Shown: positions 1 through 40,318 of the stretch, piece by piece
How positions within the stretch are numbered: the first letter of the stretch is position 1
Layout of the letters: each line of letters begins with the position of its first letter
Source: Phallusia mammillata
Lineage: Eukaryota
Assembly (NCBI GenBank): GCA_965637545.1
Contig: OZ281497.1
Span: 16,988,001 to 17,052,000 of the forward strand
Length of the DNA: 64,000 nucleotides
Direction of reading: 5' to 3'
Made by a program: the position numbers and the translations under genes
The notes under the pieces: generated by a model
What the model saw: only the letters and a program-made list of their open reading frames with translations
The model's database searches: none
Told to the model about the DNA's origin: nothing

Positions 1-1670
1 AAGTGGGTGGCGATGGAACGGAACGGAACCTGCAATTAACTATAGTTAAAGTATACTACTCGCATGTAAACTTATAAATGCCGGTGTTTGGTACCATTGT
101 CTTGTTACTCGTATTGCTGTGTAAAATGCAGATCTCTGTCTTCTGCGTCAATACTTGTACATGCACTGCTAAGCATAAGAGCAGTTGATTGGCTAAAAAT
201 TTTGCAGAAAACAGTAGCAAACTCTGAGCAAACTAGTCATTGTCAATGTGGATAGACCAACGTCGATGATGGATAAAAATAGACACGAGAATCACGACCC
301 CACAGCAAAAGCGAAGAGTTAACATCGTTACTTTTAGAAATAGCTGACAGAAGAAGTAGGTTTGAATAACCAGCAGATGAGTGAAAATTTTACACATGGA
401 GTGATTGTAAGTAGCGATGGACAGTTAGAAATACAAGGGTTACACACTGACCAGACCTGCTGTAGTTGCAGTTGTTGCAGAAGTAAGAAAACGTCTCCAA
501 TTTGTCGATGCAGCTGCCCTATTTCAAAACATTGTCCTTACAATGTGGTCTGTGCGGGAACCGGTGTGTAATTCACAATTGAAAGTTGTAAGTTTTAATC
601 TATGAAAAACTGTATCAGCATACCAGTTACCTGAGTGGAAAGGAATACCTGCTATATAATATAGTGTAGCTGCATCGCGTTACCATCCACTCTTTTGCGT
701 TCCATGACGTATTAACGGTGTGCAGTTATTTCCAGCTTGGTGATTGTTCAGTGCAATTGTGTCGCCATGTTTTCTTTCACCAAGCGTAGTCGACTCAACT
801 CAACTCAATTCCCCACCCCTGTACTTGTGGTCCCCACAAAAAAGAACTATTACGCCATAATTCGGTCACGCATGGCCAAACGAGACAAGGTAAATTTGGT
901 TACGCATGATCAGGCAAGGCACCGAGAAGGGAAAGAGATAAAACGCGAGAAGAAAAACAACAGAATGCAACCGGGGTGACCATGGGCGAAAAGCAGGCTT
1001 TGATGACGGGCCAGATTGTTTCCGTTCATGAAAATGCGGTTCCGGATTGGTTCGTGTTACAAGGGACCCGAACTGCGCTCAGTGCATTGTAGTTGTACTT
1101 GAATTTGGGCATAGTTCGAGTTGCTCCACTATGAACAGGTCGTTTCATAATTTGCAGGATTGTTCGTTGAAGGAGTTTTATCGATCTTCGACCGAAAGTT
1201 GGCCTTTTAGAAGTTACTGTGTTGTATAAGCACCTCTACATATTTACTACAAAACTTTAAAATTGGTTACCTTCAGCATAAAAATAAAAGTATTCATTGA
1301 TAGTTTTCATTTGTTCGCAGCAAATCGTGTTGGTGGTTTGAACATGTTGGACTTTTAATACAAATCGAGCATATACTAAGCGTTACTAGCGTCATATCCT
1401 TTGTCTGTTTTACAGCAAAACAGTATTTTTCAGCTCGTTTATAGAAACTGAAGGTTTGTTTGCAGAAGTAAAATTATCTTTTGTACGTAAATAGTAAAAC
1501 AAATACCGACAGTACAGCGAATTGTGATTAAACGATGTGCGCAATAGCGAGATTGCACATAGATAGTCACAGAGTATGTAATATGTCAAAACGAGATTTG
1601 ACGAGTGTCAATTATTGTGTTTACATTTCAGGCCGAGTAGGCTTTGTAACATTTTTTCATCTGTGCTGCG

Positions 1671-2429
1671 ATGGGAAACGGACAAAGAAAAATGCACAAA
1701 AACTTAGGAACAGAAGCTAATTCCGCATCGAATCACAACCATGCAAATAAAGACAACGATCAATCCAAAGAACTGAAAGAAAATTCCACCAAAGCCGAAG
1801 GACCTCCAAAACATCCCAACCTTCTTACCGAGGAAGCCCTAGGCGGAAAACACCCGCTCGAAATCTTCAAGGCATGGATGATGGAGGCCTTCCAAACAGG
1901 CGAGCCTGATCCCTTTTTTATGAATCTAGCCACAGCGACATCATGCGGCAAACCCAGCGTGCGGTTAGTGGCTCTAGGTGACTCTGACGAACGCGGACTG
2001 TACTTCGCCACGGTGGATGGAACTCAAAAAGTGAAAGAAATCAAGGAGAACCCACGTGCAGCGGTTTGTTTTTATTGGTCCAAGTTGCAGCGCACCATTA
2101 GGATCGAGGGCATCGTGGAAGAGTGTGAAAACAATGAGGAACCTTTCAAGAGATGGCCTAAACCCTTCCAGGTCGGGATGCGACTTGCGGGCGCGCAGGG
2201 GAAGCCGGTGGAAGACTGGGAGAGTGCGGAAAAGAAACTTCAGGAGGAAATGGCAAAGTTTGGCGACCAGGAGGTCCCACAACCCGAGCATGTCACCACC
2301 TATGTCATTATCCCAACGTCAGTGCAATTCATGCAACTGAAGCAGACGAGTCTTTCGGATCGATTTATCTTTACAAAAAAGGACCCAGCCGATGAGGGTA
2401 GCTGGTCGTTCGATAGGGTTTATCCATGA
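1671..2429 (+). CDS. Pyridoxine/pyridoxamine 5'-phosphate oxidase-like protein (PNPO/PdxH fold), divergent, intronless CDS, 252 aa
   Basis: Single ORF with PNPO family motifs: MNLATATSCGKPSVR, CFYW..LQRTIRIEG, DQEVP, SDR, W.FDRVYP. A splice acceptor (ttacatttcag, AG at 1630-1631) lies about 40 nt upstream of the ATG. Substrate-binding residues are replaced (see findings). Confidence 0.9.
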   Translation: MGNGQRKMHKNLGTEANSASNHNHANKDNDQSKELKENSTKAEGPPKHPNLLTEEALGGKHPLEIFKAWMMEAFQTGEPDPFFMNLATATSCGKPSVRLVALGDSDERGLYFATVDGTQKVKEIKENPRAAVCFYWSKLQRTIRIEGIVEECENNEEPFKRWPKPFQVGMRLAGAQGKPVEDWESAEKKLQEEMAKFGDQEVPQPEHVTTYVIIPTSVQFMQLKQTSLSDRFIFTKKDPADEGSWSFDRVYP

Positions 2430-3418
2430 CGAAGTTTGCTTGCTTATCGTGTGCTGGCTGTCTAAGAGCTCCGTGGCAAACGATTGTTGAGCAAGATCAC
2501 CCACCATTTCTTCACAAGACACACATGACCAGAAACGCACATGAAAATCATCGGTCTTAGCTTCAGATTTACGAGATATACGTAGGCCCATGGGTTGATA
2601 TGATTGTTTGTGCATATTTTACTGGAATTTTCACTTGTCTTTTTCGTTCACTAACTGATAAATGGGTTGCGCGCGTCATTTATCAGTATTCGTCATTTAT
2701 AATGCACTAGCGAATTTGATGATACGGCTTTTAAGGTTTTGTTTTCGTTTTAGACCAATCATTTGCGGTGTTAATGCAATTAAAACATTTGTAGGAGTAA
2801 AAAGCTAGCGAAGTTGACATACAGACTACAATAGAAACTTACTATTCTCGTTTCGTATTTAATGCCTGAAGTAACTTCGTTTATGTATACAAAAGTGCAC
2901 TATACGTTTCTTCAAACGCATCTCGTTCATACACGTCACGTTACAGTTAAGAATGGATGACGCAATCAGTGTTTGTTTATTCGATCTCGCGCCTTGATTG
3001 ATCCGCGTCTATCCAAAAAGTGTTCAGTTTTTCTACTGCTGTTTTCACCGTGTTTTAATGTTTTTCGCTTCGTCCATTAAATAGCTGGTTAATATAACTT
3101 CTGGAAAGTCTGCCCAAACATCAAACAATCTAGTCGGTGATTTTACATGAAGAAAAACACATTGATGATCAATATATTTTTGCCACCGTTTTCATCCTCT
3201 GCAGAAATGTTACACAATTGGCAAATAAAAAATCGTGCTGATCAAGAAAACGAAAGGGTCCTATAGTTCAACACACGATCTAATAAAATACAAAATGATG
3301 TCACAATCTGAAATGTGCACTGTACAAGATATAAATGCGAAATTGCCTCCATTTTTTAAAGTTACAAGGACTGTTTTCTTAAGTCACACAATTGAATAGT
3401 ACAGTAAACGCGGAAAAC

Positions 3419-3627
3419 ATGCAATCTAAAATACTTGCGGTTGCTGTACTATGTATGGGATTGTGGAGAAATACCTGTGGTGTTGGAGAACTCAAGTTAA
3501 AATCACTTCGTAGATATGATGCCTTTGAAGCAGGCTATACGCATGCATGAAGATACTACTTCCTATCAACGGTGGTCTCAATCCGGGTTCAAATACTCTC
3601 CCCGATGTATACATGGGACGAGTCCAG
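3419..3627 (+). pseudogene. Candidate frameshifted first exon of a small secreted protein
   Basis: aaaacATG, then a signal-peptide-like MQSKILAVAVLCMGLWRNTCG and a stop at 3548-3550 just after a GCAT-GCAT duplication. Removing 4 bp opens the frame to a strong donor CAG|GTGAGT at 3627/3628. No homology recognised. Confidence 0.25.
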
Positions 3628-5652
3628 GTGAGTTATCAATGCACAAATCTGAAGCGAATTTCTAGAGAGTATTAAGTTAAAGTTTTACCCAGATGTTCGT
3701 TCCTAGAATGTATGAATGTGTGCATTGCTGCAAACAAATTGGGAACCACAGCGTTATGATAGAAAAAGTTTTGTAACCATGAAGTAAATCTGATGAAAAG
3801 GGTTTCACTTGTTTCAAAGGAAAGAATCCTAAAAAAACGTTTCGCGATTCTAAAAAAATGTCAGTGAAATATAACACTTTTTTGTGAAACAATTCAAATG
3901 GTTTATTTAAATGTAAACGGATGCAAATAAAGTAACAACAACAATTAAGACAGCTAAATGCCAGTTTGTTCAAATTTCAACGAGTATTCGTATTGTACAA
4001 GAAGTGTGCATTTTGCGGTGCTTTCTAATGAGGAAATTATAAATTTGCTTGGATGGCAACGCACCTCAATTGGTACCTTTCGAATAATTGTAGTTAATGT
4101 TTTAAAGTGAGACAAAACTCGTAGACACCGCGTATTTACGGTGACGGTTTTTGCTATTGGGTCAAGAAAATTGTTTTTATTATACTTTACCTGGAAATAC
4201 TTGTAGTTCGTTTGCTTTTGGGTGTGTCCTGTCACTACAAAACACCAAAATGTCCACTTATGAATAATTAATAACTGTTTTGAGTTGTCTGTATTCAGTT
4301 ATTTTAGCACATATTGTTGTCCGTAAGAGCAGAAGGCAACACTGCGTGAACGTGTTCCTTTTATCGTGTCGACTTCCATACAGGAAACGAAGCCGTTTGA
4401 TGGCGGATGCATTATGGGTATAATTTGCAATCGAAACCAGTTCCTGTCTGTCTTAACGTTCGCTGCTACAGACACTCTTAATAACGTATGCGCTGTATTT
4501 AATTTTGTTTGCGACGTTTACTGGTTTCGGGTTTAAAATTGTTTGTATGTTCGTGATGAAAAACGCTGAAACACACTTTAAACAAAAGCACATAAACAAG
4601 AAGAAACTTACATTGTCTTTTATCACTATTATCGAAACCAATAAAAGGTTGAAACCGCTCTTAACGAATGATTTAGGGAAAAACGTGGTACGCCATTCTA
4701 CTATACGAAACTGGAGCTGCTGGATTTTCCGAAAGGTCGGAAAAGAGACTGGAGGCGCTCATCCGTTGTTTTCGCATTCCTTACTTGCGTAGAGTTCACC
4801 GCCCGGCGTTACGAGTTATTTTGGGGCATGAAACCAATTTTGTGAAACGCACTTGCGGGCTTCAAAGCTAAACGAGATTTGATTCCAGCGCCCAGCTGTC
4901 GTATCACGCATTTACGTCGACGTCGAACACTTTAGTTTCAACCGCAAGATGCAAACGTAAACCGACGCAGGGCGCTTTTTTCTTACGCTGCCTAATGGTC
5001 CGAACTTTTGTGTCGGCGACAGAACGCGAAAAAAATTTACAGCAAAGCGTTTGTGAACAACAAGGCCAAAAAAATTGACCGAAGCCGTTGTAGCTTGAGA
5101 AAGACAAATGTAAGGCATAATAAGGAGAAGACGGGAGGATACATGTTCATAATCGTTGCTCCTGAGCCTTGTCGACTGGTGCCTGAGCTTTGTCGTGTTT
5201 AGGTTGGTGTTGCAGCAGGCTCAGCGTGAAAGTGCTTCCTGACCAAGCAAAAAAATCTGCCGGATGTTGAACGCATGAATGAAACACTATCTGGAAGCGC
5301 GTCATTTAGCGCCGACACTAGCCGGTAGGTTACTCCAGATCACACAATAAAGACAGCGTACTTGGCTTGGTGGCGTGTCAGACGGTTACCAAAGGTCACG
5401 CTGACGCAAATACGTTAGTAACAAACGAAAACGCCAGCTCGTGCTAACTTTTTTGAACTATTGAAAAACGCGACCGTTTTGAGTCATTACAGCCTGAGAA
5501 ACAGGATATGCGTTTCCGAACTGCATTAAATGACCACGGCAAAATATTGTAAAACTATATAGGTTATACATAGAGAGGGAGTGGACATATGTCCTCCAGT
5601 GCGATGTATACCGATAGTTCGTTTTAGTTGAATCTGGAGTAACAGAATGAAT

Positions 5653-5891
5653 AGCCAAAACCGTACATTGTTTTGTGAAATATTTGCAAACTTCTACCTC
5701 AAAACAACTATGTGCTGCTACCATACCAGAAAAAATAGTTATACCAGACTAATCATATGTCCTTTGCTCATGTTTTTCGATGATTTAGTTTGTTTAAATT
5801 TGCAGTTATAGAATAAACAGCCAAAACTTTATCTTGTATTGTAAAGCATTTGCCAACTTCTACCTTAAGATATCTATATGATTTTACCATA
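5653..5891. repeat. Imperfect direct repeat, about 73 bp unit, 166 bp period
   Basis: agccaaaac...tttgcaaacttctacctcaa...taccata (5653-5725) vs agccaaaac...tttgccaacttctaccttaa...taccata (5819-5891); roughly 70% identical by eye. Confidence 0.55.
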
Positions 5892-6087
5892 GGAGCCGGA
5901 ATGGTTCCACTACAGTGAATAAGATAATGCTAAAAAGTGACAAGGAAAACCTGTAAACGCCTTTAATGAGAGCTATAGCGCGCTCAGTCGCGAAGGTAAA
6001 AATCTAAATTACACCAATTTTAAAGGTGCGCGTTGCCAATGTTGGTACAGTTATAGGTGATCTAATAGCGAGTGAAATTGTACAAAC

Positions 6088-9000
6088 ATGACATGCCAAT
6101 CCCTGAAGAAGGAATGCCGATTAAAATGTTTTGGTTTCATAGACTTCCAAGTGGAGGACTTTGCACGGTCTCAGGTAAGAATTTTAGTCGCTATAATCAA
6201 GTTGTGATGTTTTGGAACTTTCAGTTTTCCCATGCATAGTTTATTCCGCACCTTAACAATGTCATTAAGCACAACTTCGCGCGCCTGAAGGCATTGTTAC
6301 ATTGTCAGTGGGTGGATTTGCGACAGATTCTTAATCACAGTGTCATTTCAAATGGAGTTGCTGTCATGTGGTCATAAGTACACGCATAGTCGCAAATGGT
6401 TTATTGACCAGCAGATATTGTACTGTAACTAACAATAGACGAAACCAGCTTCTATTGACTCGGTTTGTTTCGTTTTTTTTTCAGTGGAACATCGGGCAGA
6501 GGAAGTTTCTCGCATATCGGGCGCTTGTGTTCTCATATTGGACCGTTTTCCTTATTGTCGATTTCGCCACGAACCAAAATAAAGGCTCCTTCTGCCTTTA
6601 TCTGTCGCACTGGAATGAGGCCCAACTTTCTCTATTTTTTGGCTTCGCGTTTTTCTGTGCGGGACGCTATGTGTGGAAGATGCGGCAAGCTAACAGCAGT
6701 TGTGTGAGCAGCAACAACGCCTCCAGTTCGTCCTTATCGACTGAAAGCGCATCAAAGTTAACGGGTGACTGCAAGGAACAGGAAGGTAAACGTTTTGTAA
6801 TTTCTTCCACCTTTCAGCTGCTGCAAACAGTTTTCCTTTTATTTCAAATTGAAACGACCCGGGTTAAGTGTTGGATTATCTTTGCCAAATTACCATATAA
6901 TGTGTGACGGGTAATATAAATTAGCACTAAGCAATGGCTTGTAGGTTTAATAAAATTTCCGCATCATCAGCAAAGGCCCACAATTTCCGGAAAGCAGAAA
7001 CGCTTCTCATCCGTCACTCTTACTTTGTTGACATTTAGGGAGCCCACAATGGTACAAGATGAATATGTTGTAGTTGGAAAATGCGCGATATTACACAAAT
7101 GCAAATTGTTTGCTGAACACACGTCCAGTAAAAGTGATCGTTAGTAGGACAACACAAGGGACATGTCCCAGTACATAGGTGCACAAAACCTACACGGTCA
7201 TAAGGCAGGGATGAACTTGACACGCTTGTTTACCTGCACGTTGTTGACGTCAAGTTTTTTTTTACATTTAGTCACATTTAGGCTATAACCTTGCAGACTT
7301 TGTAGCATTGCCGAACGAAAGATGTTGTTAAATAACTTTATATTGACATCGGCACGTTTCAAGGCATTTTGGTCAAGCATGTTCTGTCCTTATACGTGTC
7401 GGTTTCCACCGGATAAAACGTTTCATGACGCATCCCACTATCTTGCACACTTGCAATATGTTTGGTGTATACACTGATCGCCTGAAAAGAATGTCAACTA
7501 CTGTTTTAGATAAAATGACCGTACGTATATAAGTATCATCGCTATGAAAATATTGAATTGCATACTTTGGTAACCTTGAAGCAGTGTTATAAATGCAACC
7601 GATAAGTTAAAGTCACAAAGCTGTTGGCCACACCAAAAACTGCGCTAATGCATGAACCGAAATTGCAAACCATTAGTGTAATATAGTAGGCTAACCATAA
7701 TGTCATAAGCATGTCGGACAATCATCTTACGCTATTGGTGGCGGTGGCGTCTTGTTTTTTAAGGGTATATATTTACTTATAACGCTTAGCACATAACCTA
7801 TTTGCTAAGCTGGTAAACGAAACTTTTACATCCTCAAACAACATTTAGTAAATTTGGCTGCACCCAAGCAGTTTAAAGCAACAAACAGGCTGCGTGCAAC
7901 GTTTGGACGGGATGCAAATCGCTTTGTTGGGAGCTTAGTAAGGAAGGAACTAATATTTTTATAAGTAGTGGTTATTCAATACGAACGAATGTCCAGGAAG
8001 TTACATAAATGTTCGCTTGTCCATCCTTTCGGTAACTTTTGGGGGAACCATGTTGACAATGGCGGCTCGTAGTTTAAATTAGTATAGCCTATAGGCAGGG
8101 TTACGATCGACATGGACCCCAAAATACGACGAACGAATAATTAAATTTTCATACGAAATGAAACAGAGTTTTTTAAACAAATCTTACTATTCACAAATCT
8201 ATTGGTTTTGGTGGTTTTAACTAGCCTACTAACTCTCATATTTTCACACTGTCGGAGCAATATTACTCTTTCTCTATATAGCCTACCCACATTGCCAAAG
8301 CGCCAGTGTTTTTCTTTTTTTACCATCCCAAAGCAGCGTAAATAGCTGCAAATTTAAGGATAATACAATATAAAAAATTAAACAAAGAAAATAAAACAGA
8401 TTTTCAGCACTAGTCACAACACTCTGGTCTCATATCTTGGAAGGCTACAGAAACATCTGGCTTATTCGACAGCAAGAGTTCGTTTTAACAAATCAAAACC
8501 CTGTAATGACACTTAAAAGCTAAAAAACGAACATTAGTTACATGACAATTTGCCCGTCAGGCCAATTTTAGATGACTAGAGTTCCAAAGGCAACAGAGTG
8601 TTTGTGTTAACAGCCTTTTCTGTTTGTCATAAAGATCGGTTTACGGGTAGGCTAGTGAAGTCTCGTATCAAAATTTTTGTTAGCCTCTCATTAGCCTATA
8701 TGCGTTTCGAAATCGTGCATAATCAAGGGATCATTATTACGTTACGCACATCCACACAGATCCGGCCAGCAGTTTGCCAATAGTACCATTATAGCAGCAT
8801 GCAAAGACACTCATCACGTTTCCTGCATGGCCCGGATCCTATTTCACGTAACAAGGATGTTTCAAGCCCAAACGTGTAATAAGTTATATTGTAGTTAAAC
8901 GCAGGAGCAGGGAAAGGTAGGATATCCTATGTTGACACGTAAAATCAGGAAGTGACAACATGGCGGCCGTTAGATGACCGGTAGAAAATGCATATTAAAA

Positions 9001-10606
9001 TCGTGTCACAAAAAACTGACTCCAACTCCATTAATTCGCTAGATCAGTTAGCCATGGCAATCCTACGTCGTTGGCTTATATTGCTATGAGAACATGGGTG
9101 GCAAACTGTCAAATTATAGGTAGGCTATACACAAGACAGGGTCTTAGCCTAAATAGTAGCTCAAATAAAAACCAAACTGCCAGAGATGTTTCGACAAAAA
9201 CAATTGGCAAAACATTATATTTTCACTGATGATGACAATTCTTTTTGTCGAAACGTCTGTTTAATAAAATGGGGTTTAATACGCTTATTTTACATCGCTA
9301 GCAATTTGGTTTTTAACTAGAAGGGTGGCTTAGCACATATTGCCCTTGCATATACACTGTGGGTCCCCACACATGCAAAGTTGAAAATAATGCAATTCAA
9401 GAGATAACCATGAGAAAGTCGGGTGTTGTAAGGTAAAACACAGTGATCGGCACTGGGCTTAAATAATAATACTATGTAGAATACAAACTATAAAATTAGA
9501 TTCACCCCAGATATTGTTTGAAGTATGTCCTATTAAACGTTTTAAAAAACTGACCCATTTTAGGGGGCTAGTAGGGCAACTAATTGGGTTCGACACACAA
9601 ACTAAAAAATATATAAAAACCGCAATGACTCAATCAATAGTACTGCAAAATTTCAACCCAATCCGCCAAACTTCCGGGTAAAAATACCCATTTTAGGGGG
9701 CTAGCGGGGTAAATACTGGGGTTATCAACAAAAACAAAGTGGGATGCACATCTACATAACTATATCTACCATCTGTGTAAATTTCAGCCAAATCCATCAA
9801 ACATTTGATGGAAAAACGAGTCGGACAAACTTTGGGAAGAAAAAAAAAGAAAAACAATTCGAGTAAAATCAATATGTGTCCCCTTCAGGGAAGGGGACCC
9901 ATAATAATGTCCAATTATAAATTTGCAAAAAGACTGTTAACCTACTTTCCGTAAGACTGTTAACCTACTTTCCGTCAGCTTTGCCCAAAGTTACATTTCG
10001 ACTGCAACACTACACAACATCTTTGACAAAACGATTATATCACCTTTTTCAGTGACAGCCATTACCATGTCGGACGGGACATTGCCTGGCTCCATGCAAG
10101 TGCGGCTGCGGTGGTATCACGGCCTAACGACAATGCTTTACGTCACCTCGCTCAGTATTTCCGTGGCAGTGACGTTACTCTACTCCTTTTTCGAGATGGA
10201 CAACAGCTCGGGTGACAAGCAGATGTCAGCTGGCAACTTTCACTTGCACTTCGTTAACTCATTGCTCATTCTCATCGATTTCGTTCTCAACTGTATCCCC
10301 ATACGACTACTGCACTTTATTTATGTCTCGGTATTTACAGTGGCCTACTGTACTTTTCTCTTTGTGCTCCATGTAACAGGCGTGGACTCAGCATTGTACG
10401 AACTTGTGGATTGGAAAAGAAACACCAAGTGGGCTATTGCGTTCAGCATAGGCATGATATTTCTCATTGCACCAGCCACTCACACTGGCATGTACTTCCT
10501 ACAACGAATAGTCCGCTTTTTTAGTTCCCGGACGAAGCGAGAGACGAGAAACGCGTCGGTTGTGGATGAAGAGAAAGAAGATTCTCCGCAGTTATTGGTT
10601 TACTGA
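6088..10606 (+). CDS. Protein rolling stone-like multi-pass membrane protein, 3 exons, about 313 aa
   Basis: Exons 6088-6174 (MTCQ...DFARSQ), 6485-6785 (WNIGQRKFLAYRALV...YLSHW) and 10053-10606 (...FHLHFVNSLLILIDFVLNCIPIRLLHF...LYELVDW). All junctions are GT-AG and phases are consistent (0, 1). Motifs are typical of rolling-stone-like proteins. Confidence 0.85.
9315..9908. mobile_element. Helentron/DINE-1-type non-autonomous element (HINE-like) in intron 2 of the rolling-stone-like gene
   Basis: Subterminal inverted repeats cacatattg (9334-9342) and caatatgtg (9870-9878). The second is followed by a 9-bp hairpin gtccccttc-agg-gaaggggac (9878-9898) and an A/T tail. Internal 19-bp direct repeat acccattttagggggctag at 9553 and 9686. 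Ends are approximate. Confidence 0.6.
9930..9975. repeat. Perfect 23-bp tandem duplication
   Basis: aagactgttaacctactttccgt x2 (9930-9952, 9953-9975). Confidence 0.9.
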
Positions 10607-16443: not shown

Positions 16444-19400
16444 TCATTCGAGAATAAGACTTATAAAGGATGCAATGTTGAGTCTGTTCTCGCGCAAGTG
16501 CGACTGTATGAAGGGGTGCTCCTCAAGATCGCGGTAATTGGGACGTTGCGCTGGATCCTTGTTAAGGCAACAGCGACAGAAGTTGTGTAGTTCGGGCGAA
16601 AATGCGTTGTCCGGGAGCGACGGTGAAGGATCTTCAACCACCTAAAAACAGGATGCTTCATTACGAAAATCGCTGTTTCAAACCGAAGGCTTTTAACCGG
16701 AAGTAACTTAGAGGTAAATCTGACATGATTTTAGAGCAAACTTTACCATTGTCCAACTTTTTTGGCATGCTGAATTTGTGCAGTGAAGAACGGGGAATTT
16801 TATCACAATGCAATGGGGTCAAAGGAGAGAAATATCGATATATGGTTGTAGACTAATAGTTTTAAATGTATACTAATAAAGTTGTATGTATTAAGTATAA
16901 AATTATTCAAGCCAATGAATATACGAGTAAAGAGGCCAAGCTGTGATCAAAATGAGCAACGAAAACAAGTAATTAAAATAAGTAAACTCGGGACCATCAT
17001 AAATTGGGCCGATCTATTCAGCTACGTATTGTTTAAAACAACAAAGGAACTAAAAGCAAAATCGCTATGGGCGTTACTTATATCGCGCGTATGAGTCGAC
17101 GGGAATTTAAATCCTGCAAGAACACAGAAGTTTGGTATCCTACATCATGCCGAATTACCGGTTGTGGACGGATATCGGTTAGTTTCATGTCCGTTGTGGT
17201 ATCTTATGCGTCGCCCAAATTACATGGATATAGACCCTTTAAAGTGCATAAGATACAAGTACCAAAATACTTGCTAAACACACAATTTTCAAAAGCTTTC
17301 ACCAAAACCCATTTAAATGTTACCACACAGGGCTTTGTAACTTTCCAAGGTGTCGTTATAGCAAAGGTAAAGGCAACGCAAGGTTACACCCACTTTCACT
17401 AACCGGGTCTTGGTGTATTACGTTGAAAGTTTGAAACTATTATGTTTGTAGCTTTATCGATAAATATTGTAAACGATTATGAAACTTTACCTTTTCACGA
17501 ATTAGCCAACACTGTCGTTAGCTTAACACCCGATCTCGTACCTCCTGTTTTCTACTTTGTATACCTCTAGCCAGGGTTTTTTTAAGGTTTGGTTTGGGTG
17601 ACCGCTAAGTAGTTTTAAGAGACCGCAAGTGTTTCATTTAAATACCAAAAATAGCCATATTTGCTTAAACGAATTATTTATTAGGCTACTGGCAAATTTT
17701 GGGAAACCGCTGGAGAAATTTGGGGGACCGTTTCGGTCCCCCAAAACACCTTAAAAAAACACTGCCCCTAGCCTAGGGGCTACATTCGCCCCTGTTAAGA
17801 GCCACTGGCCTAAAACCCTTCTAACGACCACTGCACTAATCTCAAGATCACTAACCTGTTTTAACTGCTGAAAGGGATTCTTCCAGGTATCGTAGGGGAA
17901 GTCCCCGGTTGCAACTTCGATCATGGTGATGCCGAGGCTCCAGACGTCACTCTTCACATCGTAACCCTGCTTGTTCTTGGCAGGGTCGATACGCTCAGGG
18001 GCCATATATGGTTTGCAGCCGGCGTCGATCGTTTTGGCCAGGGAGTCGACAAGCTGTCCGCTAATGCCGAAGTCGCACAGTTTCACTTGCCCTGCGTCAA
18101 TAAAAAGATAGATTTTAAAACAACGTGTACAGTTTAAAAACAACCCATCGTTTACAGGGTAAATATAAGTAAGCAAAGTTTTGCGAGAAGTAGAGCATTA
18201 AGGCGTCAAAGAAATTGGGAGTTAAACAGAATCTTTAAAATCAAACGGAGAGAAACTCTTTAAAAATCATGGTCGAAAACTTGTGTCCTAAAGGTTTAAC
18301 CAATGCCTTGCTCGCTTGTTTTTGATTTATTCTTGCCTGTTTGATTAGTGAAAAAAATATTTTCGCTTGTAAATCAACTCTATTACCAGCTGTGTTATCA
18401 AATATGGTCGGTTGTTATCATAATCTGCAAGAAAGGGGTTTGCGCAAAAAAGTCTGCAATTGCAATCATTTATTCCAGTGACTTTTCCTGCAACAAACAC
18501 TGATGACTCAGCACACGGAGGCACATGTGTGACGTCGGAGCATGCTAAGTCACAGAGAGACTTGCAAATATGGAAGTTGAAGAGGTCGACTTAGCAATGC
18601 CGCCTCCAACAATGCAACCGCAGGCAAAGAAATAACAGAACAGGAGCTTGGCTGACACAAGGATAAATAACCTTAGATGTGTTAACCTGGTAACGTAGTT
18701 TTTCCTTCCAAATCAAAAGCTTATCGCAACAAAATGGCCTATGGTTGCTGTCAGTGCCAAAATTGCAGTTGTTTCAAATTTAATGCTTGAACCCGAAAGT
18801 GCTAGGGTAAATCCGATCCACACCTAACGGAAGCCCGAAAACTGTTTACCAAATAAACCAAAAACGCAATGACATGTACGTGCGAAACAATCTAATCCAC
18901 ATCTGGCTTGTTCGTGCAAAAAACGTAAAAATATAATATATACGAAGCAATGTTGACATTCAGGCCCATATTAGGCCCATTCTTTTCTAAAATCAAAGCC
19001 CGAGACAAGCCCATAGTTAAGCCGAAAAGCCCTGACTTATAATTCTGGTTTATATATGGATTAAGTTCAAACGTGTGATAAAGGCTACAGTTCATTTTAT
19101 TCGAAGGATGAAGCACAAAAGTAAACTCCTTAAAAAATTTAAACTTTAAATGTGTGTAGGGAATTTCCCCGGGCTCGTTGCAGAAAATTTAACCGAACAG
19201 GTCATATGCATCAAAACCACCCAACGGTTCTCCTTTTGTTGTGAGTTTTGTTGCAAACAATAAAGGCAGCTGAGTCGGAGGAAAGTCCCGAAAGCTGACC
19301 GTTGGTACAACGAGATCAAATCTCCCCCAACGAAGGACAATAGTGGCGTAACCAAACACATCCAGTGACAGTAATTGTCCATTTGATGACAGACTACAGA

Positions 19401-36755: not shown

Positions 36756-39700
36756 ATGTCTGCCCCAGTGGTGCTGCAACTGCCTACAGTGAGCTTTTCC
36801 AAACACAAGAAAAAGCACAGTGCTTGTACAACATCATCAGTTGGCACTAAGCAGACAGAAAACACGGATGTAAATCCTCAATCAGATGATTCTTCAGTTA
36901 CTATTATTCCTGTTGTGATAGATTTTGAAAGGTTGTTAAAAAAAGAAAACAAAGTTCAAGAACAAGTAAGATTTTTTATTCAATATAATGTAAATACGAA
37001 ATCATGCAGTTCTCAGTTACTGTTGCAAATTGTGTGACATTGCTATAATGAACCTAATCAAACAAGGTGTCAAGGCCCTTTTGTGTGTTTTCAAATATAT
37101 TATGTATGTATACATATTTATTTATATGTATCATATACGAACAAAACTACCATTTTTGTTTGTCACACACTGTTTTTGTTTTTGGTTTGTTCAACATTTT
37201 GATTCAAATATTTGGTTGACATAATTATCTTACATATGGTTATTTTTAGGTGGTTGAAGGGGTAGAAAACAAGGACTTATTGTATGGTGTTGCCAACCTT
37301 TATGGAATTTCACTTCCTGAACTGACAGATGACATTATATATCCTACTTTGTGTGAAAAGTGGTCAAAAACTTTGTTGCTGATAAGACAAGAAGATGAAG
37401 TAATTAAAGATTTAAGCCAACAAACAAGAAAAATAAAGGATCTTGGAAAGTTGGAAACTGACATTAAAGACAGGGGTAAGTTAGACTGATGTATAACGTT
37501 ACAAACAGGTTTTGTTATTTGTGGTTGACTTCAAGCAGTTTGACTTTACCAGTAAATAGATATATACTTTGATTTGACTATTAATAAGTCATTTTAACAG
37601 TTTTTAATTAATTTTCTGTGAAAAATATATTTTTGTTATTTTTACATCCTGCCAAAAGCATTGAAAGTTTGTCATTTTTTACATCCTGCCAAAAGCATTA
37701 AACTATACACTGGTTTTGATATTAACACAAAAATGACCATTGGTAGAAAAAGCTGCAGCTATTTCGGAGCAAGCTGTAAACATCTTCAGTGATGATGAAT
37801 CAGCAGATGAAGACGAAGACGGTAGTGATGACAACTGGATGTTGCAAGTCACAGAATTTCTTCAGCAAGTTAAAGATAGATACAAAAAACGTCAGGAGTA
37901 AGTTAACTATGTTTGTAGTTTGGTGTTTATCAAGATAGTCTACCGAGGTCACAAATTTTTGGCAGATTTTATGAATCTCAAAAATCCAAAATGGCTGTCG
38001 GAGATGATGCCAAAACTTCTGTTTCTAAAGACTTAATTGGTAAGCATAATATTTATTATAGTGTGAGCAAATGTTGTTTTTTAAAGGCAACAAATATTTG
38101 TGCAATAAGTAAATTTTGTGCAAAAATCTTTATTTATGAATTCTGATCGTCCAGGTGTTGAAAATCGCATTGTGGCTAGTGCCACGTTTGAACGTTCCTA
38201 TGAAAAGCCTGGACAGAGGGTTATACAGCTGACATTAATTGCTGTAAGGAAGAAGTACCGATATCTTGGCATTGGTCACTATATGATGAAGCAGATTCAT
38301 GACTCCACTATAACTGGTGGCAGTGATGTAATAGTAGTGAATGCTGATCAAAACGCAGTGGACTTTTTTGAAAAAGAAGGTTAGACAATTGGTCCTTAAA
38401 GTATTTCTACTTGTTGCATTCAAGCGTATATATAATATACAAAATTGTACAAAAACATAAATTTGAAAAATTAAAAATCAACATATAAACAACTAACTTT
38501 GACGAAATTTAAATAAACTTCTAGGTTTTACTGATGATGTACTGCTCAATAGTCCTTATGCACATATTGGGGACATTTGGTTCAACAGCAAGAGGATGTG
38601 CTTTCTTCCCTCATATGTGTCATCAAGTGTTGACAGAAGTGCACTAAACTCGTTGCCTCCAGAGTTTGATCCTAGCTTGACAGAACTAGATTTAAGGGAA
38701 ATGGAATTGGAAACAGCGTTGTGGAGGGAGAAAAGCTTGCAAGTACATCAATAGTTTAAATTAAAGTAAAAAATTTGACAAAAGTTGTATCTGCTTTTTA
38801 TCTGTTTAAATAAGTACTGTACCTCATTATCATTGTGAGATTTGCTTGGTACATTTATACTACATATGTTGCATCCAAAGTAGGAAATTGCCTGTAATGA
38901 ACTTTGTGCTCACAAACTATGATGATGTACTACACATTTTAGTTTTCTATTAGTCTTCCTACAATGACAATTTTTTTATCTGCAATGCAATAAAGTTTTT
39001 TTTATTGGAAAATCAAACCTTCTGTACAGCTAAAAAATGTACAGAAGGCCAGCAATTTGTGTCAAGAACAAACTCATTGAATCCATTCTCCACATTGTTC
39101 CTTAAAAAGATTTGTTGGTAATGTTTTATAATTACAGGCATACCAATCTCAAGTCCTTATTGTGCGTCGAATGCGACAAGAAGTTCTCACTCTCAGAGCA
39201 AAACTGGCACTGCAGGATGAAATGATAGCAAATCTTCAGCGGGAGCTTGAAATAGCAAAAGAATCAAAACTTGCATCTCAAGAGAGTCACCTTAGAAAAC
39301 GTCTAAGCAAACTTCGTGAAGCAATGTTAGACCTAGAAGAAGAGGTCAACTTAGGAAATGAAGGTGTTTATACTATTACTATTTAAATTATGTTGTTGTT
39401 TTTAAATTCAGAATCTCCTAAAACACATGCTGTCATTTCTAAAAAAAATCTGTTCCTTTCATATTTTTTATAGGTTCAACTGAAGCTGTAGGTGCAACTG
39501 AATCACTTTGCTCTTCTTCAGCACAAGATAATTCATCATATAAGTCAGAAACCAGTCAAAGTCAGGTCAAAATTATATCAACTGATTTTCCTTGCACTAG
39601 TGAGACTGATCCAAAACTTTCTGAAGATGATCAAACCAGTGGCAAAGCATCACAAGATTCTGTTCAAGACACTGTAGTTGGCTTGCCAGTCCCAAAATAC

Positions 39701-40318
39701 CAAAAACAGGATGAAATAAAAGAGCTTGCTCTAATGGAAATAAATCATTGCTTTACAGCCAGCATGGACAGTGGTGAATACAACTTTAGTGGCACAGCAT
39801 ATCATGTTACAAATATTGTCAATACATTGTCTGCAATGCCATCTCCCACTGTGGTCCAGCTATATGAGCAAACCAGACTTAAAAGTTGTCACCCAGACAT
39901 AGTTGCCAACCTGTACTTTTGCGGCACTCAAGGATCACTGACCAATGATAGAATGCTGGATATTCTTACAAAGGGTTTTAGCACCGAGGACTTTGCACAG
40001 AGCGAGTATGGAATTGGGTTACATTTTTCAAGACATGCTCGTGCAGCAGCAAGGTTTTCACCAACAGGGAAGATTCTTGTTGCTAAGGTCTGCCTTGGAA
40101 GTACCCAGACTGTTACAGCAAAAGATCCATGTCGTAGTAGTCCACCAGATGGACATGATTCAATACTTACTCAAGGAAGATTGTCATCCATGTCAGAGGG
40201 TATGTCAAGGGGACATTTCTACTCAAGATCATCCAACACTGGATCTAGTGAATACATTGTGTTCGATGTACACCAAGCGCTTCCTCTTGCATTTATTGAG
40301 TACAACCTAATTTTTTAA
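36756..40318 (+). CDS. Uncharacterised protein: GCN5-like GNAT acetyltransferase domain + coiled coil + C-terminal PARP/ADP-ribosyltransferase-like domain, 8 exons, about 724 aa
   Basis: Exons 36756-36965, 37250-37475, 37747-37897, 37966-38039, 38155-38379, 38525-38742, 39138-39363 and 39474-40318 join in one frame (2175 nt). GNAT motif A is [13 protein letters not shown] and motif B is NADQNAVDFFEKEGF. PARP-like motifs: LYFCGT, KGF, YGIGLHFS, VAKVCLG, PPDGHDS, EYIVFDVHQALP. Confidence 0.85.
37639..37699. repeat. 24-bp direct duplication in an intron
   Basis: tttttacatcctgccaaaagcatt at 37639-37662 and 37676-37699. Confidence 0.85.

What the first reader, a model, noticed from the sequence alone, without database searches (positions are those of the whole stretch)
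1671..2429. PNPO paralog that has lost all six aligned substrate-binding residues: probable pseudo-enzyme or repurposed flavoprotein
Seen in the sequence, aligned by eye to human PNPO (numbering from memory). The PNP/PMP-binding residues are all replaced: K100->G (RLVALG), Y157->P, R161->W, S165->F (PFKRWPKPFQVG), R225->S and H227->S (QTSLSDR). The N-terminal RxxY motif is replaced by a low-complexity N/K/E stretch. FMN contacts are partly kept (R95, K117, Q174, R229) and partly changed (R116->Q, Q139->T, S175->G, W219->M). The ORF is intact and intronless and more GC-rich than its flanks. Established: the split-barrel PNPO fold has been reused for other chemistry (e.g. PhzG in phenazine synthesis). 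Inference: a retro-duplicated or intron-free paralog with a new substrate or a ligand-binding or structural role. It cannot be the housekeeping vitamin B6 oxidase.
Basis: partly seen in the sequence, partly recalled or inferred. Interest (0 to 1): 0.7.

Follow-up and report, generated by a model that had tools for sequence, protein, structure and literature searches.

The report
Ascidian PNPO paralogue with rebuilt pocket
This sea-squirt gene is an expressed extra copy of the vitamin-B6 enzyme PNPO, kept intact in at least four sea-squirt species, that retains the enzyme's fold and part of its flavin site but has lost every residue that holds the vitamin-B6 substrate, so it must do something else, and nobody has studied what.

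Summary
ORF 1671-2429(+) encodes a 252-aa PNPO/PdxH-fold protein. Computed alignments confirm K100G, Y157P, R161W, S165F, R225S and H227S (human numbering), plus loss of W206 and of the N-terminal RKxY lid.

It is not a decaying copy. It belongs to a small, unstudied ascidian family with three other members: Ciona XP_004227011 ("uncharacterized"), Clavelina CAK8688636 and one metagenome-assembled relative. All four keep an open frame, share an invariant Trp in place of R161, lack K100, W219 and R225 (H227 survives only in Clavelina), and keep FMN contacts R95, K117, R141 and R229. Contigs from probable RNA runs cover only 1631-2676 and 2861-3148, colinear with the genome.

Ciona and Clavelina also carry a canonical PNPO, so this is an extra paralogue there. 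The canonical gene was not shown for Phallusia.

- Ascidian canonical PNPO genes are also intronless, so the lack of introns is no evidence for retroposition.
- R116Q and Q139T lie within canonical tunicate or animal variation.

The trees cannot separate duplication within ascidians from bacterial transfer; discrete characters weakly favour duplication.

Most likely function (inferred, not shown): an FMN-dependent oxidoreductase or flavin binder for a non-phosphorylated, hydrophobic ligand. I rate it a new variant of a known kind, of moderate interest.

The parts
1621..1631 (+). Pyrimidine-rich ...ttacatttcag acceptor-like site. The longest RNA-run contig begins at 1631, on the G of the AG. 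Possibly a spliced-leader trans-splice acceptor or the mRNA 5' end.
   Evidence: Sequence. Contig X1 record 1 spans 1631-2676, with no coverage at 1-1630 in X1, X2 or X4. Trans-splicing itself is inferred, not shown.
1631..1670 (+). 5' UTR, with an in-frame TAG at 1638-1640 and no upstream ATG.
1671..2429 (+). Complete intronless CDS of 252 aa plus stop: a divergent PNPO-family paralogue.
1671..1835 (+). N-terminal polar N/K/E-rich extension (aa 1-55), predicted to be largely disordered. It starts MGNGQRK: Gly2 is present, but the full N-myristoylation consensus is not met here.
   Evidence: pLDDT is 54-78 over residues 1-50. The motif test is: Ciona and Clavelina match the consensus, Phallusia and ERZ82 do not.
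1836..2426 (+). PNPO/PdxH split-barrel domain (aa 56-252). It includes PNPOx_N (aa 72-162, nt 1884-2156) and the C-terminal dimerisation region PNP_phzG_C (aa 211-252, nt 2301-2426), and ends in the family's ...RVYP tail.
   Evidence: Pfam. AlphaFold2 with a 106-sequence alignment gives mean pLDDT 88.4, and above 88 from residue 51 on. Top Foldseek hits are human, yeast and E. coli PNPO, E about 1e-20.
1977..1979 (+). Codon GGT = Gly103, in place of the substrate-phosphate Lys100 of human PNPO. The family has G/G/C/G here.
2154..2156 (+). Codon TGG = Trp162, in place of Arg161. It is invariant in all four family members within a conserved F-x-x-W-P motif and is the family's clearest signature.
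2349..2357 (+). Codons for S227-L228-S229, in place of the R225-L-H227 substrate-orienting pair. A G>T variant at 2357 in one RNA run is synonymous (TCG->TCT).
1962..1964 (+). Codon CGG = Arg98 (human R95). This FMN contact is kept in all four members. K120 (nt 2028-2030), R144 (2100-2102) and R231 (2361-2363) are kept likewise.
   Evidence: Contact residues are taken from PMC10969823; R95 and K117 as FMN contacts are from my memory of UniProt annotation.
2430..2676 (+). 3' UTR covered by RNA-run contigs.
   Evidence: X1 record 1 reaches 2676 and X2 record 4 reaches 2634.
2861..3148 (+). A further RNA-run contig, seen in X1 only. It is either a continuation of the 3' UTR or a separate short transcript; this is unresolved.
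   Evidence: record 2.

Best explanation
Shown:
- The gene is an expressed, intronless third PNPO-family paralogue. By the named members it is confined to ascidians (Phallusia, Ciona, Clavelina, plus one unnamed relative).
- It predates the split of the Phallusia+Ciona line from the Clavelina line.
- In Ciona and Clavelina it sits alongside a canonical PNPO.
- It keeps the split-barrel fold, the C-terminal dimerisation element and the basic residues that hold the FMN phosphate and ring edge (R95, K117, R141, R229 in human numbering).
- Every residue that grips the phosphate and pyridine ring of PNP/PMP/PLP is replaced: K100, Y157, R161, S165, W206, R225, H227 and the N-terminal RKxY lid. An invariant Trp stands where R161 was, and hydrophobic residues occupy 165, 206 and 219.

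Inferred:
- The protein is still a dimeric flavin (FMN) protein, but its former substrate pocket has lost four or five positive charges and become hydrophobic.
- It therefore no longer makes PLP. It acts instead on, or binds, a non-phosphorylated and probably aromatic or hydrophobic small molecule, much as PhzG reuses this fold for phenazine precursors.
- It most likely arose by duplication of an ascidian PNPO gene that was already intronless, followed by fast divergence.
For: Fold and family:
- Pfam PNPOx_N and PNP_phzG_C both score above their cut-offs.
- The AlphaFold2 model has pLDDT 88.4, and the best structural matches are human, yeast and E. coli PNPO, then PhzG.

Substrate site lost, selectively:
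- Alignments.
- 0 of 5 conserved PLP-contact columns are kept, against 31 of 47 other conserved columns.
- The pdxH equivalog scores 103-140 for the four family members (cut-off 180) and 225-245 for canonical tunicate PNPOs.

FMN site partly kept:
- R95, K117, R141 and R229 in 4 of 4 members.
- T111 and E217 in 3 of 4.
- S or T at 115 in 4 of 4.

Precedent: the E. coli K72I/Y129F/R133L/H199A quadruple mutant, which changes the same positions, keeps its fold and one FMN per subunit (PMC8215295; PDB 6YLZ, hit).

The family is real and constrained:
- An exhaustive HMMER search of 1.84 billion representatives gave only three close relatives, named.
- The family is monophyletic at 100/99, with (Phallusia, Ciona) and (Clavelina, ERZ82) as sub-clades.
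- There are 41 invariant positions, including F-x-x-W-P.
- The two haplotigs of the unnamed species differ by one synonymous site in 708 bp of CDS, against about 0.9% in the flanks.

Expression: contigs of three probable RNA runs from two studies lie only on 1631-2676 and 2861-3148, while a DNA run covers all 6 kb evenly.

Paralogy: canonical PNPO genes P0383 (Ciona) and P0382 (Clavelina) exist.

Origin:
- AU tests do not reject a clade of this family with tunicate PNPOs (p 0.68 and 0.42).
- Five signature columns are shared with tunicate canonical PNPO and rare in bacteria; none show the reverse.
- Ascidian PNPO genes duplicate repeatedly and are all intronless.
Against: - No cofactor or activity was measured.
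- Three FMN contacts from the partner subunit are eroded: S175 and W219 in 0 of 4 members, Q174 in 2 of 4. FMN binding could therefore be weak or lost.
- I had no model coordinates, so I could not inspect the pocket geometry or the position of Trp162 relative to the flavin.
- The unconstrained trees place the family outside the animal clade, once beside four bacterial sequences at 95/86. Its best pairwise identities are to bacterial PdxH (about 38-41%).
- The RNA runs are labelled RNA only by the tool's guess.
- A canonical PNPO in Phallusia itself was not demonstrated. Only this 64-kb window was searchable, and it holds none.
Confidence: 0.55

Rival explanations
1. Non-catalytic pseudo-enzyme. 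The protein keeps the split-barrel dimer but no longer binds flavin productively, and serves as a binding, scaffolding or regulatory protein, as CREG does among animal split-barrel proteins. In species with an MGxxxS start it might be tethered to membranes by N-myristoylation.
For: - S175 and W219 are lost in all four members and Q174 in two.
- All substrate contacts are lost.
- CREG (1XHN) appears among the distant structural matches.
- Ciona and Clavelina start with a consensus myristoylation motif.
- The family evolves faster than the canonical enzyme: Ciona-Clavelina identity is 39.7% here against 55.6% for canonical PNPO.
Against: - The four basic residues that hold the FMN phosphate and ring edge are invariant across the family. 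So are Q220, E/D77 and the core around the flavin. That is hard to explain if nothing phosphate-bearing binds there.
- Human R229W and R229Q mutants show that R229 matters for FMN affinity (PMC10969823).
- The engineered E. coli quadruple mutant keeps its FMN.
Confidence: 0.27
2. Domesticated horizontal transfer. The family descends from a bacterial pdxH-like gene acquired by an ascidian ancestor rather than from the animal PNPO.
For: - The unconstrained ML trees put the family outside the starred animal+tunicate clade, once as sister to four bacterial sequences at 95/86.
- The highest pairwise identities are to bacterial PdxH.
- The gene is intronless.
- In three of four members the spacer before the last strand is short, as in bacteria.
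Against: - The stem branch is very long (0.6-0.8 on either side), so long-branch attraction is expected.
- AU tests do not reject a clade with tunicates (p 0.68, where the constrained tree was 6.9 lnL units better than the free search; p 0.42) or with animals (p 0.63).
- Five signature residues are shared with tunicate canonical PNPO, none exclusively with bacteria.
- Canonical ascidian PNPOs are intronless too.
- With the family profile as query, animal PNPOs rank first outside the family.
Confidence: 0.13
3. Decaying retrocopy or a chance ORF with no function.
For: The gene is intronless and dispersed: no synteny was found with the Clavelina or ERZ82 loci within 10 kb, and its catalytic residues are lost.
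Against: - Open frames of 235-252 codons are kept in four species whose proteins are only 37-44% identical.
- Substitution is targeted rather than random.
- Only synonymous polymorphism was seen.
- Transcript-like contigs cover the gene.
Confidence: 0.02
4. Still a working PNP/PMP oxidase that binds its substrate with different residues.
For: It scores just above the cut-off of the broad NCBIfam subfamily model PRK05679 (136.6 bits against 129). UniRef names the Clavelina member 'pyridoxal 5'-phosphate synthase' automatically.
Against: - All phosphate-binding side chains and the orienting R225/H227 pair are gone.
- In E. coli, R197E alone raises Km 8000-fold (PMC8215295).
- It scores below the pdxH equivalog cut-off.
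- Canonical copies coexist in Ciona and Clavelina.
Confidence: 0.03

Closest known systems
Canonical pyridoxine/pyridoxamine 5'-phosphate oxidase (PNPO/PdxH, EC 1.4.3.5; human 1NRG, E. coli 1G76)
   Same: - Same two Pfam domains and the same predicted split-barrel fold (TM about 0.76-0.79 by target).
- Same C-terminal ...W-x-x-x-R-[LV]-x-P tail.
- FMN contacts R95, K117, R141 and R229 are kept.
   Different: - All PNP/PLP contacts are replaced: K100, Y157, R161, S165, W206, R225, H227 and the N-terminal RKxY lid.
- S175 and W219 are lost.
- It scores below the pdxH equivalog cut-off.
- It has a new N-terminal polar extension.
PhzG, the FMN-dependent oxidase of phenazine biosynthesis (1TY9, 4HMS)
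   Same: A PNPO-fold paralogue that keeps FMN and uses the pocket for a non-phosphorylated aromatic substrate, which is the working model proposed here. It is a strong structural match (Foldseek E about 1e-17).
   Different: It is not a member: 98.6 bits against a cut-off of 270. PhzG is bacterial and sits in phz operons. There is no evidence of a shared substrate.
Engineered E. coli PNPO quadruple mutant K72I/Y129F/R133L/H199A (6YLZ/6YMH; PMC8215295)
   Same: It changes four of the same positions (K100, Y157, R161, H227 in human numbering). It remains folded and dimeric and carries one FMN per subunit, so these losses need not cost the flavin.
   Different: It is a laboratory construct that keeps R197 (R225), W191 (W219) and S147 (S175). 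Its allosteric 'Arg cage' (R23, R24, R215) is not conserved in the ascidian family: there is no RR in the N-terminal segment, and the C-terminal Arg is present in only two of four members.
Ascidian tandem PNPO paralogue beside the canonical gene (Ciona L008:5195-5923; P0138; L004:473-1204)
   Same: It is intronless and ascidian. It also lacks K100 (S/Q/Q) and H227 (A/N/S). Y157, R161 and R225 are also replaced, except R161 in the L004 copy.
   Different: - It is a separate, younger clade nested inside tunicate canonical PNPOs (97/96).
- It keeps S175 and Q174, usually keeps W219 and WGGY, and has no F-x-x-W-P motif.
- It scores 180-203 on the pdxH model.
- It is physically linked to the canonical gene and a PAP2 gene.
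CREG (cellular repressor of E1A-stimulated genes, 1XHN)
   Same: An animal split-barrel protein that has given up catalysis, so it is a precedent for the pseudo-enzyme rival.
   Different: Only a distant structural match (TM 0.33-0.46, 14% identity). It belongs to a different branch of the superfamily and is secreted. That CREG has lost FMN binding is from my memory, not tested here.

Membership tests
PNPO-like split-barrel superfamily (Pfam PF01243 PNPOx_N + PF10590 PNP_phzG_C) | Scores above Pfam gathering thresholds for both domains | tested here: met
   54.8 bits against 28.1, and 28.1 bits against 27.
PNPO-like split-barrel superfamily | Split-barrel fold matching solved PNPO structures | tested here: met
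   AlphaFold2 pLDDT 88.4, pTM 0.79. Foldseek top hits are 3HY8, 1CI0, 8QYW and 1NRG at E about 1e-20, TM by target 0.75-0.79.
PdxH/PNPO enzyme proper (EC 1.4.3.5; NCBIfam TIGR00558 equivalog) | Score at or above the curated equivalog cut-off (180 bits) | tested here: not met
   132.1 bits. The other family members score 103-140, while canonical Ciona, Clavelina and Styela PNPOs score 225-245.
PdxH/PNPO enzyme proper | Substrate phosphate and ring contacts K100, Y157, R161, S165, R225, H227 (PMC10969823) | tested here: not met
   G, P, W, F, S, S in the window. Across the family, 0 of 5 conserved PLP-contact columns are kept.
PdxH/PNPO enzyme proper | N-terminal R-K-x-Y lid segment | tested here: not met
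   Absent in all four family members and present in the canonical animal and tunicate sequences aligned. Its role as a lid is from my memory of the E. coli structures.
PdxH/PNPO enzyme proper | Full set of FMN contacts (T111, Q139, R141, Q174, S175, E217, W219, R229, plus R95 and K117) | tested here: inconclusive
   R95, K117, R141 and R229 are kept in 4 of 4 members; T111 and E217 in 3 of 4; Q174 in 2 of 4; S175 and W219 in 0 of 4. Position 139 is T/T/V/S, against S in canonical tunicates.
PdxH/PNPO enzyme proper | FMN bound, and PNP/PMP oxidised to PLP | not testable with these tools
   Needs purified protein.
PhzG (NCBIfam NF038138 equivalog) | Score at or above 270 bits | tested here: not met
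   98.6 bits.
Ascidian divergent PNPO-like family (defined here: window, Ciona XP_004227011.1, Clavelina CAK8688636.1, P0123) | Monophyly, the F-x-x-W-P motif replacing Y-F-x-x-R-P, G or C at K100, loss of W219/R225, and a single-exon ORF of 235-252 aa | tested here: met
   Clade support is 100/99. The single-exon structure is shown for the window, Clavelina and P0123; it was not checked for Ciona, where no contig was on record.

The most novel reading that the evidence does not exclude
The family is a new flavoenzyme (or flavin carrier) found so far only in phlebobranch and aplousobranch ascidians. Its hydrophobic, Trp-lined pocket would serve chemistry peculiar to these animals, for example redox handling of blood-cell polyphenols (tunichromes) or of accumulated vanadium. 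In some species it might be membrane-tethered by N-myristoylation. The exhaustive search turned up no Styela clava member, although Styela's canonical PNPO is in the word-search collection. That would fit such a link, but it rests on one annotated stolidobranch proteome and on my memory of which ascidians accumulate vanadium.
Probability: 0.1. Interest if true: 0.7.

Novelty: new variant of a known kind. Interest (0 to 1): 0.42.

Why it matters
PNPO is normally a single-copy, strongly conserved salvage enzyme. Here a chordate lineage carries three intronless PNPO-family genes, and two of them have independently dismantled the vitamin-B6 site while keeping the fold. The dispersed paralogue studied here is the more radical of the two. 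It has been kept since before the Phallusia/Ciona line split from the Clavelina line, and it carries a diagnostic Trp in place of the phosphate-binding Arg.

It therefore offers a natural experiment in how a flavin split-barrel is retargeted, an animal counterpart to bacterial PhzG. It is also a concrete uncharacterised target in Ciona, a tractable model organism (LOC101242346). In practical terms, automatic names such as 'pyridoxal 5'-phosphate synthase' for these proteins are very probably wrong.

Tried and rejected
1. The word-index homologue search with the window protein alone found nothing above 38% identity and missed the family. The exhaustive representative search was needed to find it.
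2. Structure prediction from the single sequence was useless (pLDDT 34.6). It was repeated with an alignment.
3. Synteny: tblastx of the Clavelina and ERZ82 loci against the window matched only the gene itself.
4. Phylogenetic origin: two careful ML trees and three AU tests left the position of the family unresolved. I do not claim either duplication or transfer as shown.
5. dN/dS: not computed. The family members are 37-44% identical, so synonymous sites are saturated, and no close species pair was available. Haplotype and RNA-run polymorphism served as a weak substitute.
6. Canonical PNPO in Phallusia itself: it could not be searched for, since only this window is accessible. The window holds no second copy. 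Earlier-findings look-ups by words and by sequence were blank.
7. N-myristoylation as a family-wide feature: rejected, since only 2 of 4 members fit the consensus.
8. Conservation of the E. coli allosteric PLP 'Arg cage': rejected from the alignment.
9. Literature: no paper mentions LOC101242346 or PNPO in ascidians.
11. Inspecting the pocket in the model was not possible, because coordinates are not exposed to scripts.
Full report
**What is there**

The window holds one long ORF at 1671-2429 on the + strand, 252 aa. It stands out in G+C: 0.47-0.53, against 0.33-0.40 in the flanks. Family and structure hits:
- Pfam PNPOx_N and the PNPO/PhzG C-terminal dimerisation region both score above their gathering thresholds.
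- The broad NCBIfam subfamily model PRK05679 scores just above its cut-off.
- The pdxH equivalog model scores well below its cut-off (132 bits against 180), and so does the PhzG equivalog (99 against 270).
- The best solved relative by sequence is human PNPO (E 1e-25).

I did not verify the species, but every result below fits an ascidian.

**The observation**

- Substrate contacts replaced: K100->G103, Y157->P158, R161->W162, S165->F166, R225->S227, H227->S229.
- FMN contacts R95, K117, Q174 and R229 kept.
- R116->Q, Q139->T, S175->G and W219->M changed.

W206, another ring contact listed in PMC10969823, is also lost. So is the N-terminal RKxY segment.

**It is a family, not a one-off**

A word-index search found nothing closer than 38% identity. 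An exhaustive HMMER pass over 1.84 billion cluster representatives found only four proteins below E 1e-30. One is a beetle protein made of two fused canonical PNPO domains. The other three are:
- Ciona intestinalis XP_004227011.1, named 'uncharacterized protein LOC101242346';
- Clavelina lepadiformis CAK8688636.1;
- an unnamed protein on two haplotigs of an ENA long-read metagenome assembly.

A profile of the four members found nothing more: scores drop from 340 to 172 bits.

All four share G or C at K100, an invariant Trp at R161 inside a conserved F-x-x-W-P motif, hydrophobic residues at 165, 206 and 219, and loss of R225. H227 is lost in three of the four and survives in Clavelina. R95, K117, R141, R229, Q220 and much of the core are invariant.

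Across 52 columns that are at least 85% conserved in 100 canonical sequences, the family keeps 31 of 47 non-substrate columns in at least three members, but none of the five PLP-contact columns. The loss is therefore aimed at the substrate site rather than being general decay.

**Constraint and expression**

- The four proteins are 37-44% identical, against 56% for the canonical Ciona-Clavelina pair. All keep open frames of 235-252 codons.
- The family is monophyletic (100/99). Its internal split, (Phallusia, Ciona) versus (Clavelina, unnamed), fits vertical descent between phlebobranchs and aplousobranchs.
- The two haplotigs of the unnamed species differ by about 0.9% in their flanks but by a single synonymous site in the CDS.
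- The only variant seen in the Phallusia ORF is synonymous (2357 G>T, TCG->TCT).
- Contigs of three small runs from two studies, which the tool guesses to be RNA, lie only on 1631-2676 and 2861-3148. A DNA run covers the whole 6 kb at even depth.
- The longest of these contigs is colinear with the genome, so there is no intron. It begins at 1631, on the AG of a pyrimidine-rich acceptor-like site. That would suit spliced-leader trans-splicing, which is an inference.
- An in-frame TAG at 1638-1640 makes the ATG at 1671 the start codon.

**Canonical copies and gene structure**

I used an unnamed canonical-looking hit as query. Its nearest named relatives turned out to be the annotated PNPOs of Clavelina, Ciona and Styela, which score 225-245 bits on the pdxH equivalog. 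Ciona and Clavelina therefore each have a canonical PNPO as well as a member of the divergent family.

These canonical genes are single uninterrupted ORFs too. Each is followed by a further tandem PNPO paralogue and a PAP2 gene. This has two consequences:
- Being intronless says nothing about retroposition of the window gene.
- Ascidians carry three kinds of PNPO gene.

Most copies of the tandem paralogue have separately lost K100 and H227, and usually Y157, R161 and R225. The Clavelina copy has lost only K100. The tandem paralogues nest inside the tunicate canonical clade and lack the Trp signature.

The alignment also shows that R116->Q and Q139->T are unremarkable. Canonical tunicate enzymes have A/S/G/N at 116 and S at 139.

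**Origin**

Unconstrained ML trees (LG+C20 PMSF) place the family on a very long stem outside the animal clade, once beside four bacterial sequences. AU tests do not reject a clade with tunicate PNPOs: p 0.68, where the constrained tree was actually 6.9 log-likelihood units better than the free search, and p 0.42. Nor do they reject a clade with all animals, p 0.63.

A count of signature columns gives five residues shared with tunicate canonical PNPO and rare in bacteria (for example His at human position 170), and none of the opposite kind. I read this as weak support for duplication within ascidians. Bacterial transfer remains possible, at roughly one chance in eight.

**Structure and mechanism**

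With the alignment, AlphaFold2 gives pLDDT 88.4, and above 88 from residue 51 on. The first roughly 55 residues are polar and low-confidence. Foldseek returns human, yeast and E. coli PNPO, then PhzG.

One of the hits is the engineered E. coli K72I/Y129F/R133L/H199A mutant. Its authors report that it keeps the wild-type fold and one FMN per subunit (PMC8215295). That mutant changes four of the positions changed here, so these losses are compatible with a folded flavoprotein.

The pocket has lost four or five positive charges and gained Trp and aliphatic side chains, while the basic FMN-holding residues are invariant. The best-supported reading is therefore a dimeric FMN protein retargeted to a non-phosphorylated, hydrophobic or aromatic ligand. 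This step is an inference.

Loss of S175 and W219 and partial loss of Q174 leave real room for the alternative that flavin binding is weakened or gone, which would make it a pseudo-enzyme.

N-myristoylation is possible for the Ciona and Clavelina proteins (MGxxxS start) but is not a family-wide feature.

**Novelty**

I found no paper on this family. Databases call its members 'uncharacterized', or name them automatically as PLP synthase.

It is a new, divergent subfamily of a well-known enzyme family. That makes it a new variant of a known kind, not a new kind of system. Lineage-specific paralogues with rebuilt pockets are common, so interest is moderate. Interest would rise if the protein were tied to ascidian-specific redox chemistry.

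**Limits**

- No biochemical data.
- The RNA label on the runs is a guess.
- The Phallusia canonical gene was not located.
- The Ciona gene structure was not checked.

Noticed in passing
L008:3001-3759 and 5195-5923 (Ciona); L006:3001-3756 and 4535-5233 (Clavelina); L004:473-1204 and 3001-3777; L005:3001-3750 and 5697-6494: Ascidian canonical PNPO genes are intronless. Each has a tandem intronless PNPO paralogue as a neighbour, downstream in Ciona and Clavelina (where a PAP2 gene follows) and upstream in L004 and L005. The Ciona, L004 and P0138 tandem copies have independently lost K100 and H227, and mostly Y157/R161/R225. The Clavelina copy has lost only K100 (Met).
   Followed up: partly
P0383 (Ciona canonical PNPO) and P0382 (Clavelina canonical PNPO): The otherwise complete canonical enzymes carry Ser (Ciona) or Cys (Clavelina) at the His227 position. 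All but Styela lack Arg116. The human R116Q variant is disease-associated (title cited in PMC8215295).
   Followed up: no
window 680-790: A short element that is highly repeated in the genome. The DNA run's summed contig depth is about 9190 in the 601-800 bin, against about 95 elsewhere, with many short contigs ending at 741-786 and one joint that skips 71 bases (681->753).
   Followed up: no
window 10052-10603 (+), 17751-18173 (-), 39683-40315 (+): ORF fragments with Pfam hits to 'rolling stone' (Rost), a protein kinase domain and a PARP catalytic domain. These are probably exons of neighbouring genes. The PARP hit lies inside the GNAT-PARP finding noted separately by this scan on the same window.
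   Followed up: no
P0121 (Ceutorhynchus assimilis CAG9761058.1, 438 aa): This beetle protein consists of two complete canonical PNPO domains fused head to tail. The two halves are each other's closest relatives in the tree (100/99).
   Followed up: no
window 2861-3148: A separate 288-base contig from one probable RNA run lies 185 bases beyond the end of the main transcript contig. It is either a continuation of the 3' UTR or an independent short transcript.
   Followed up: no
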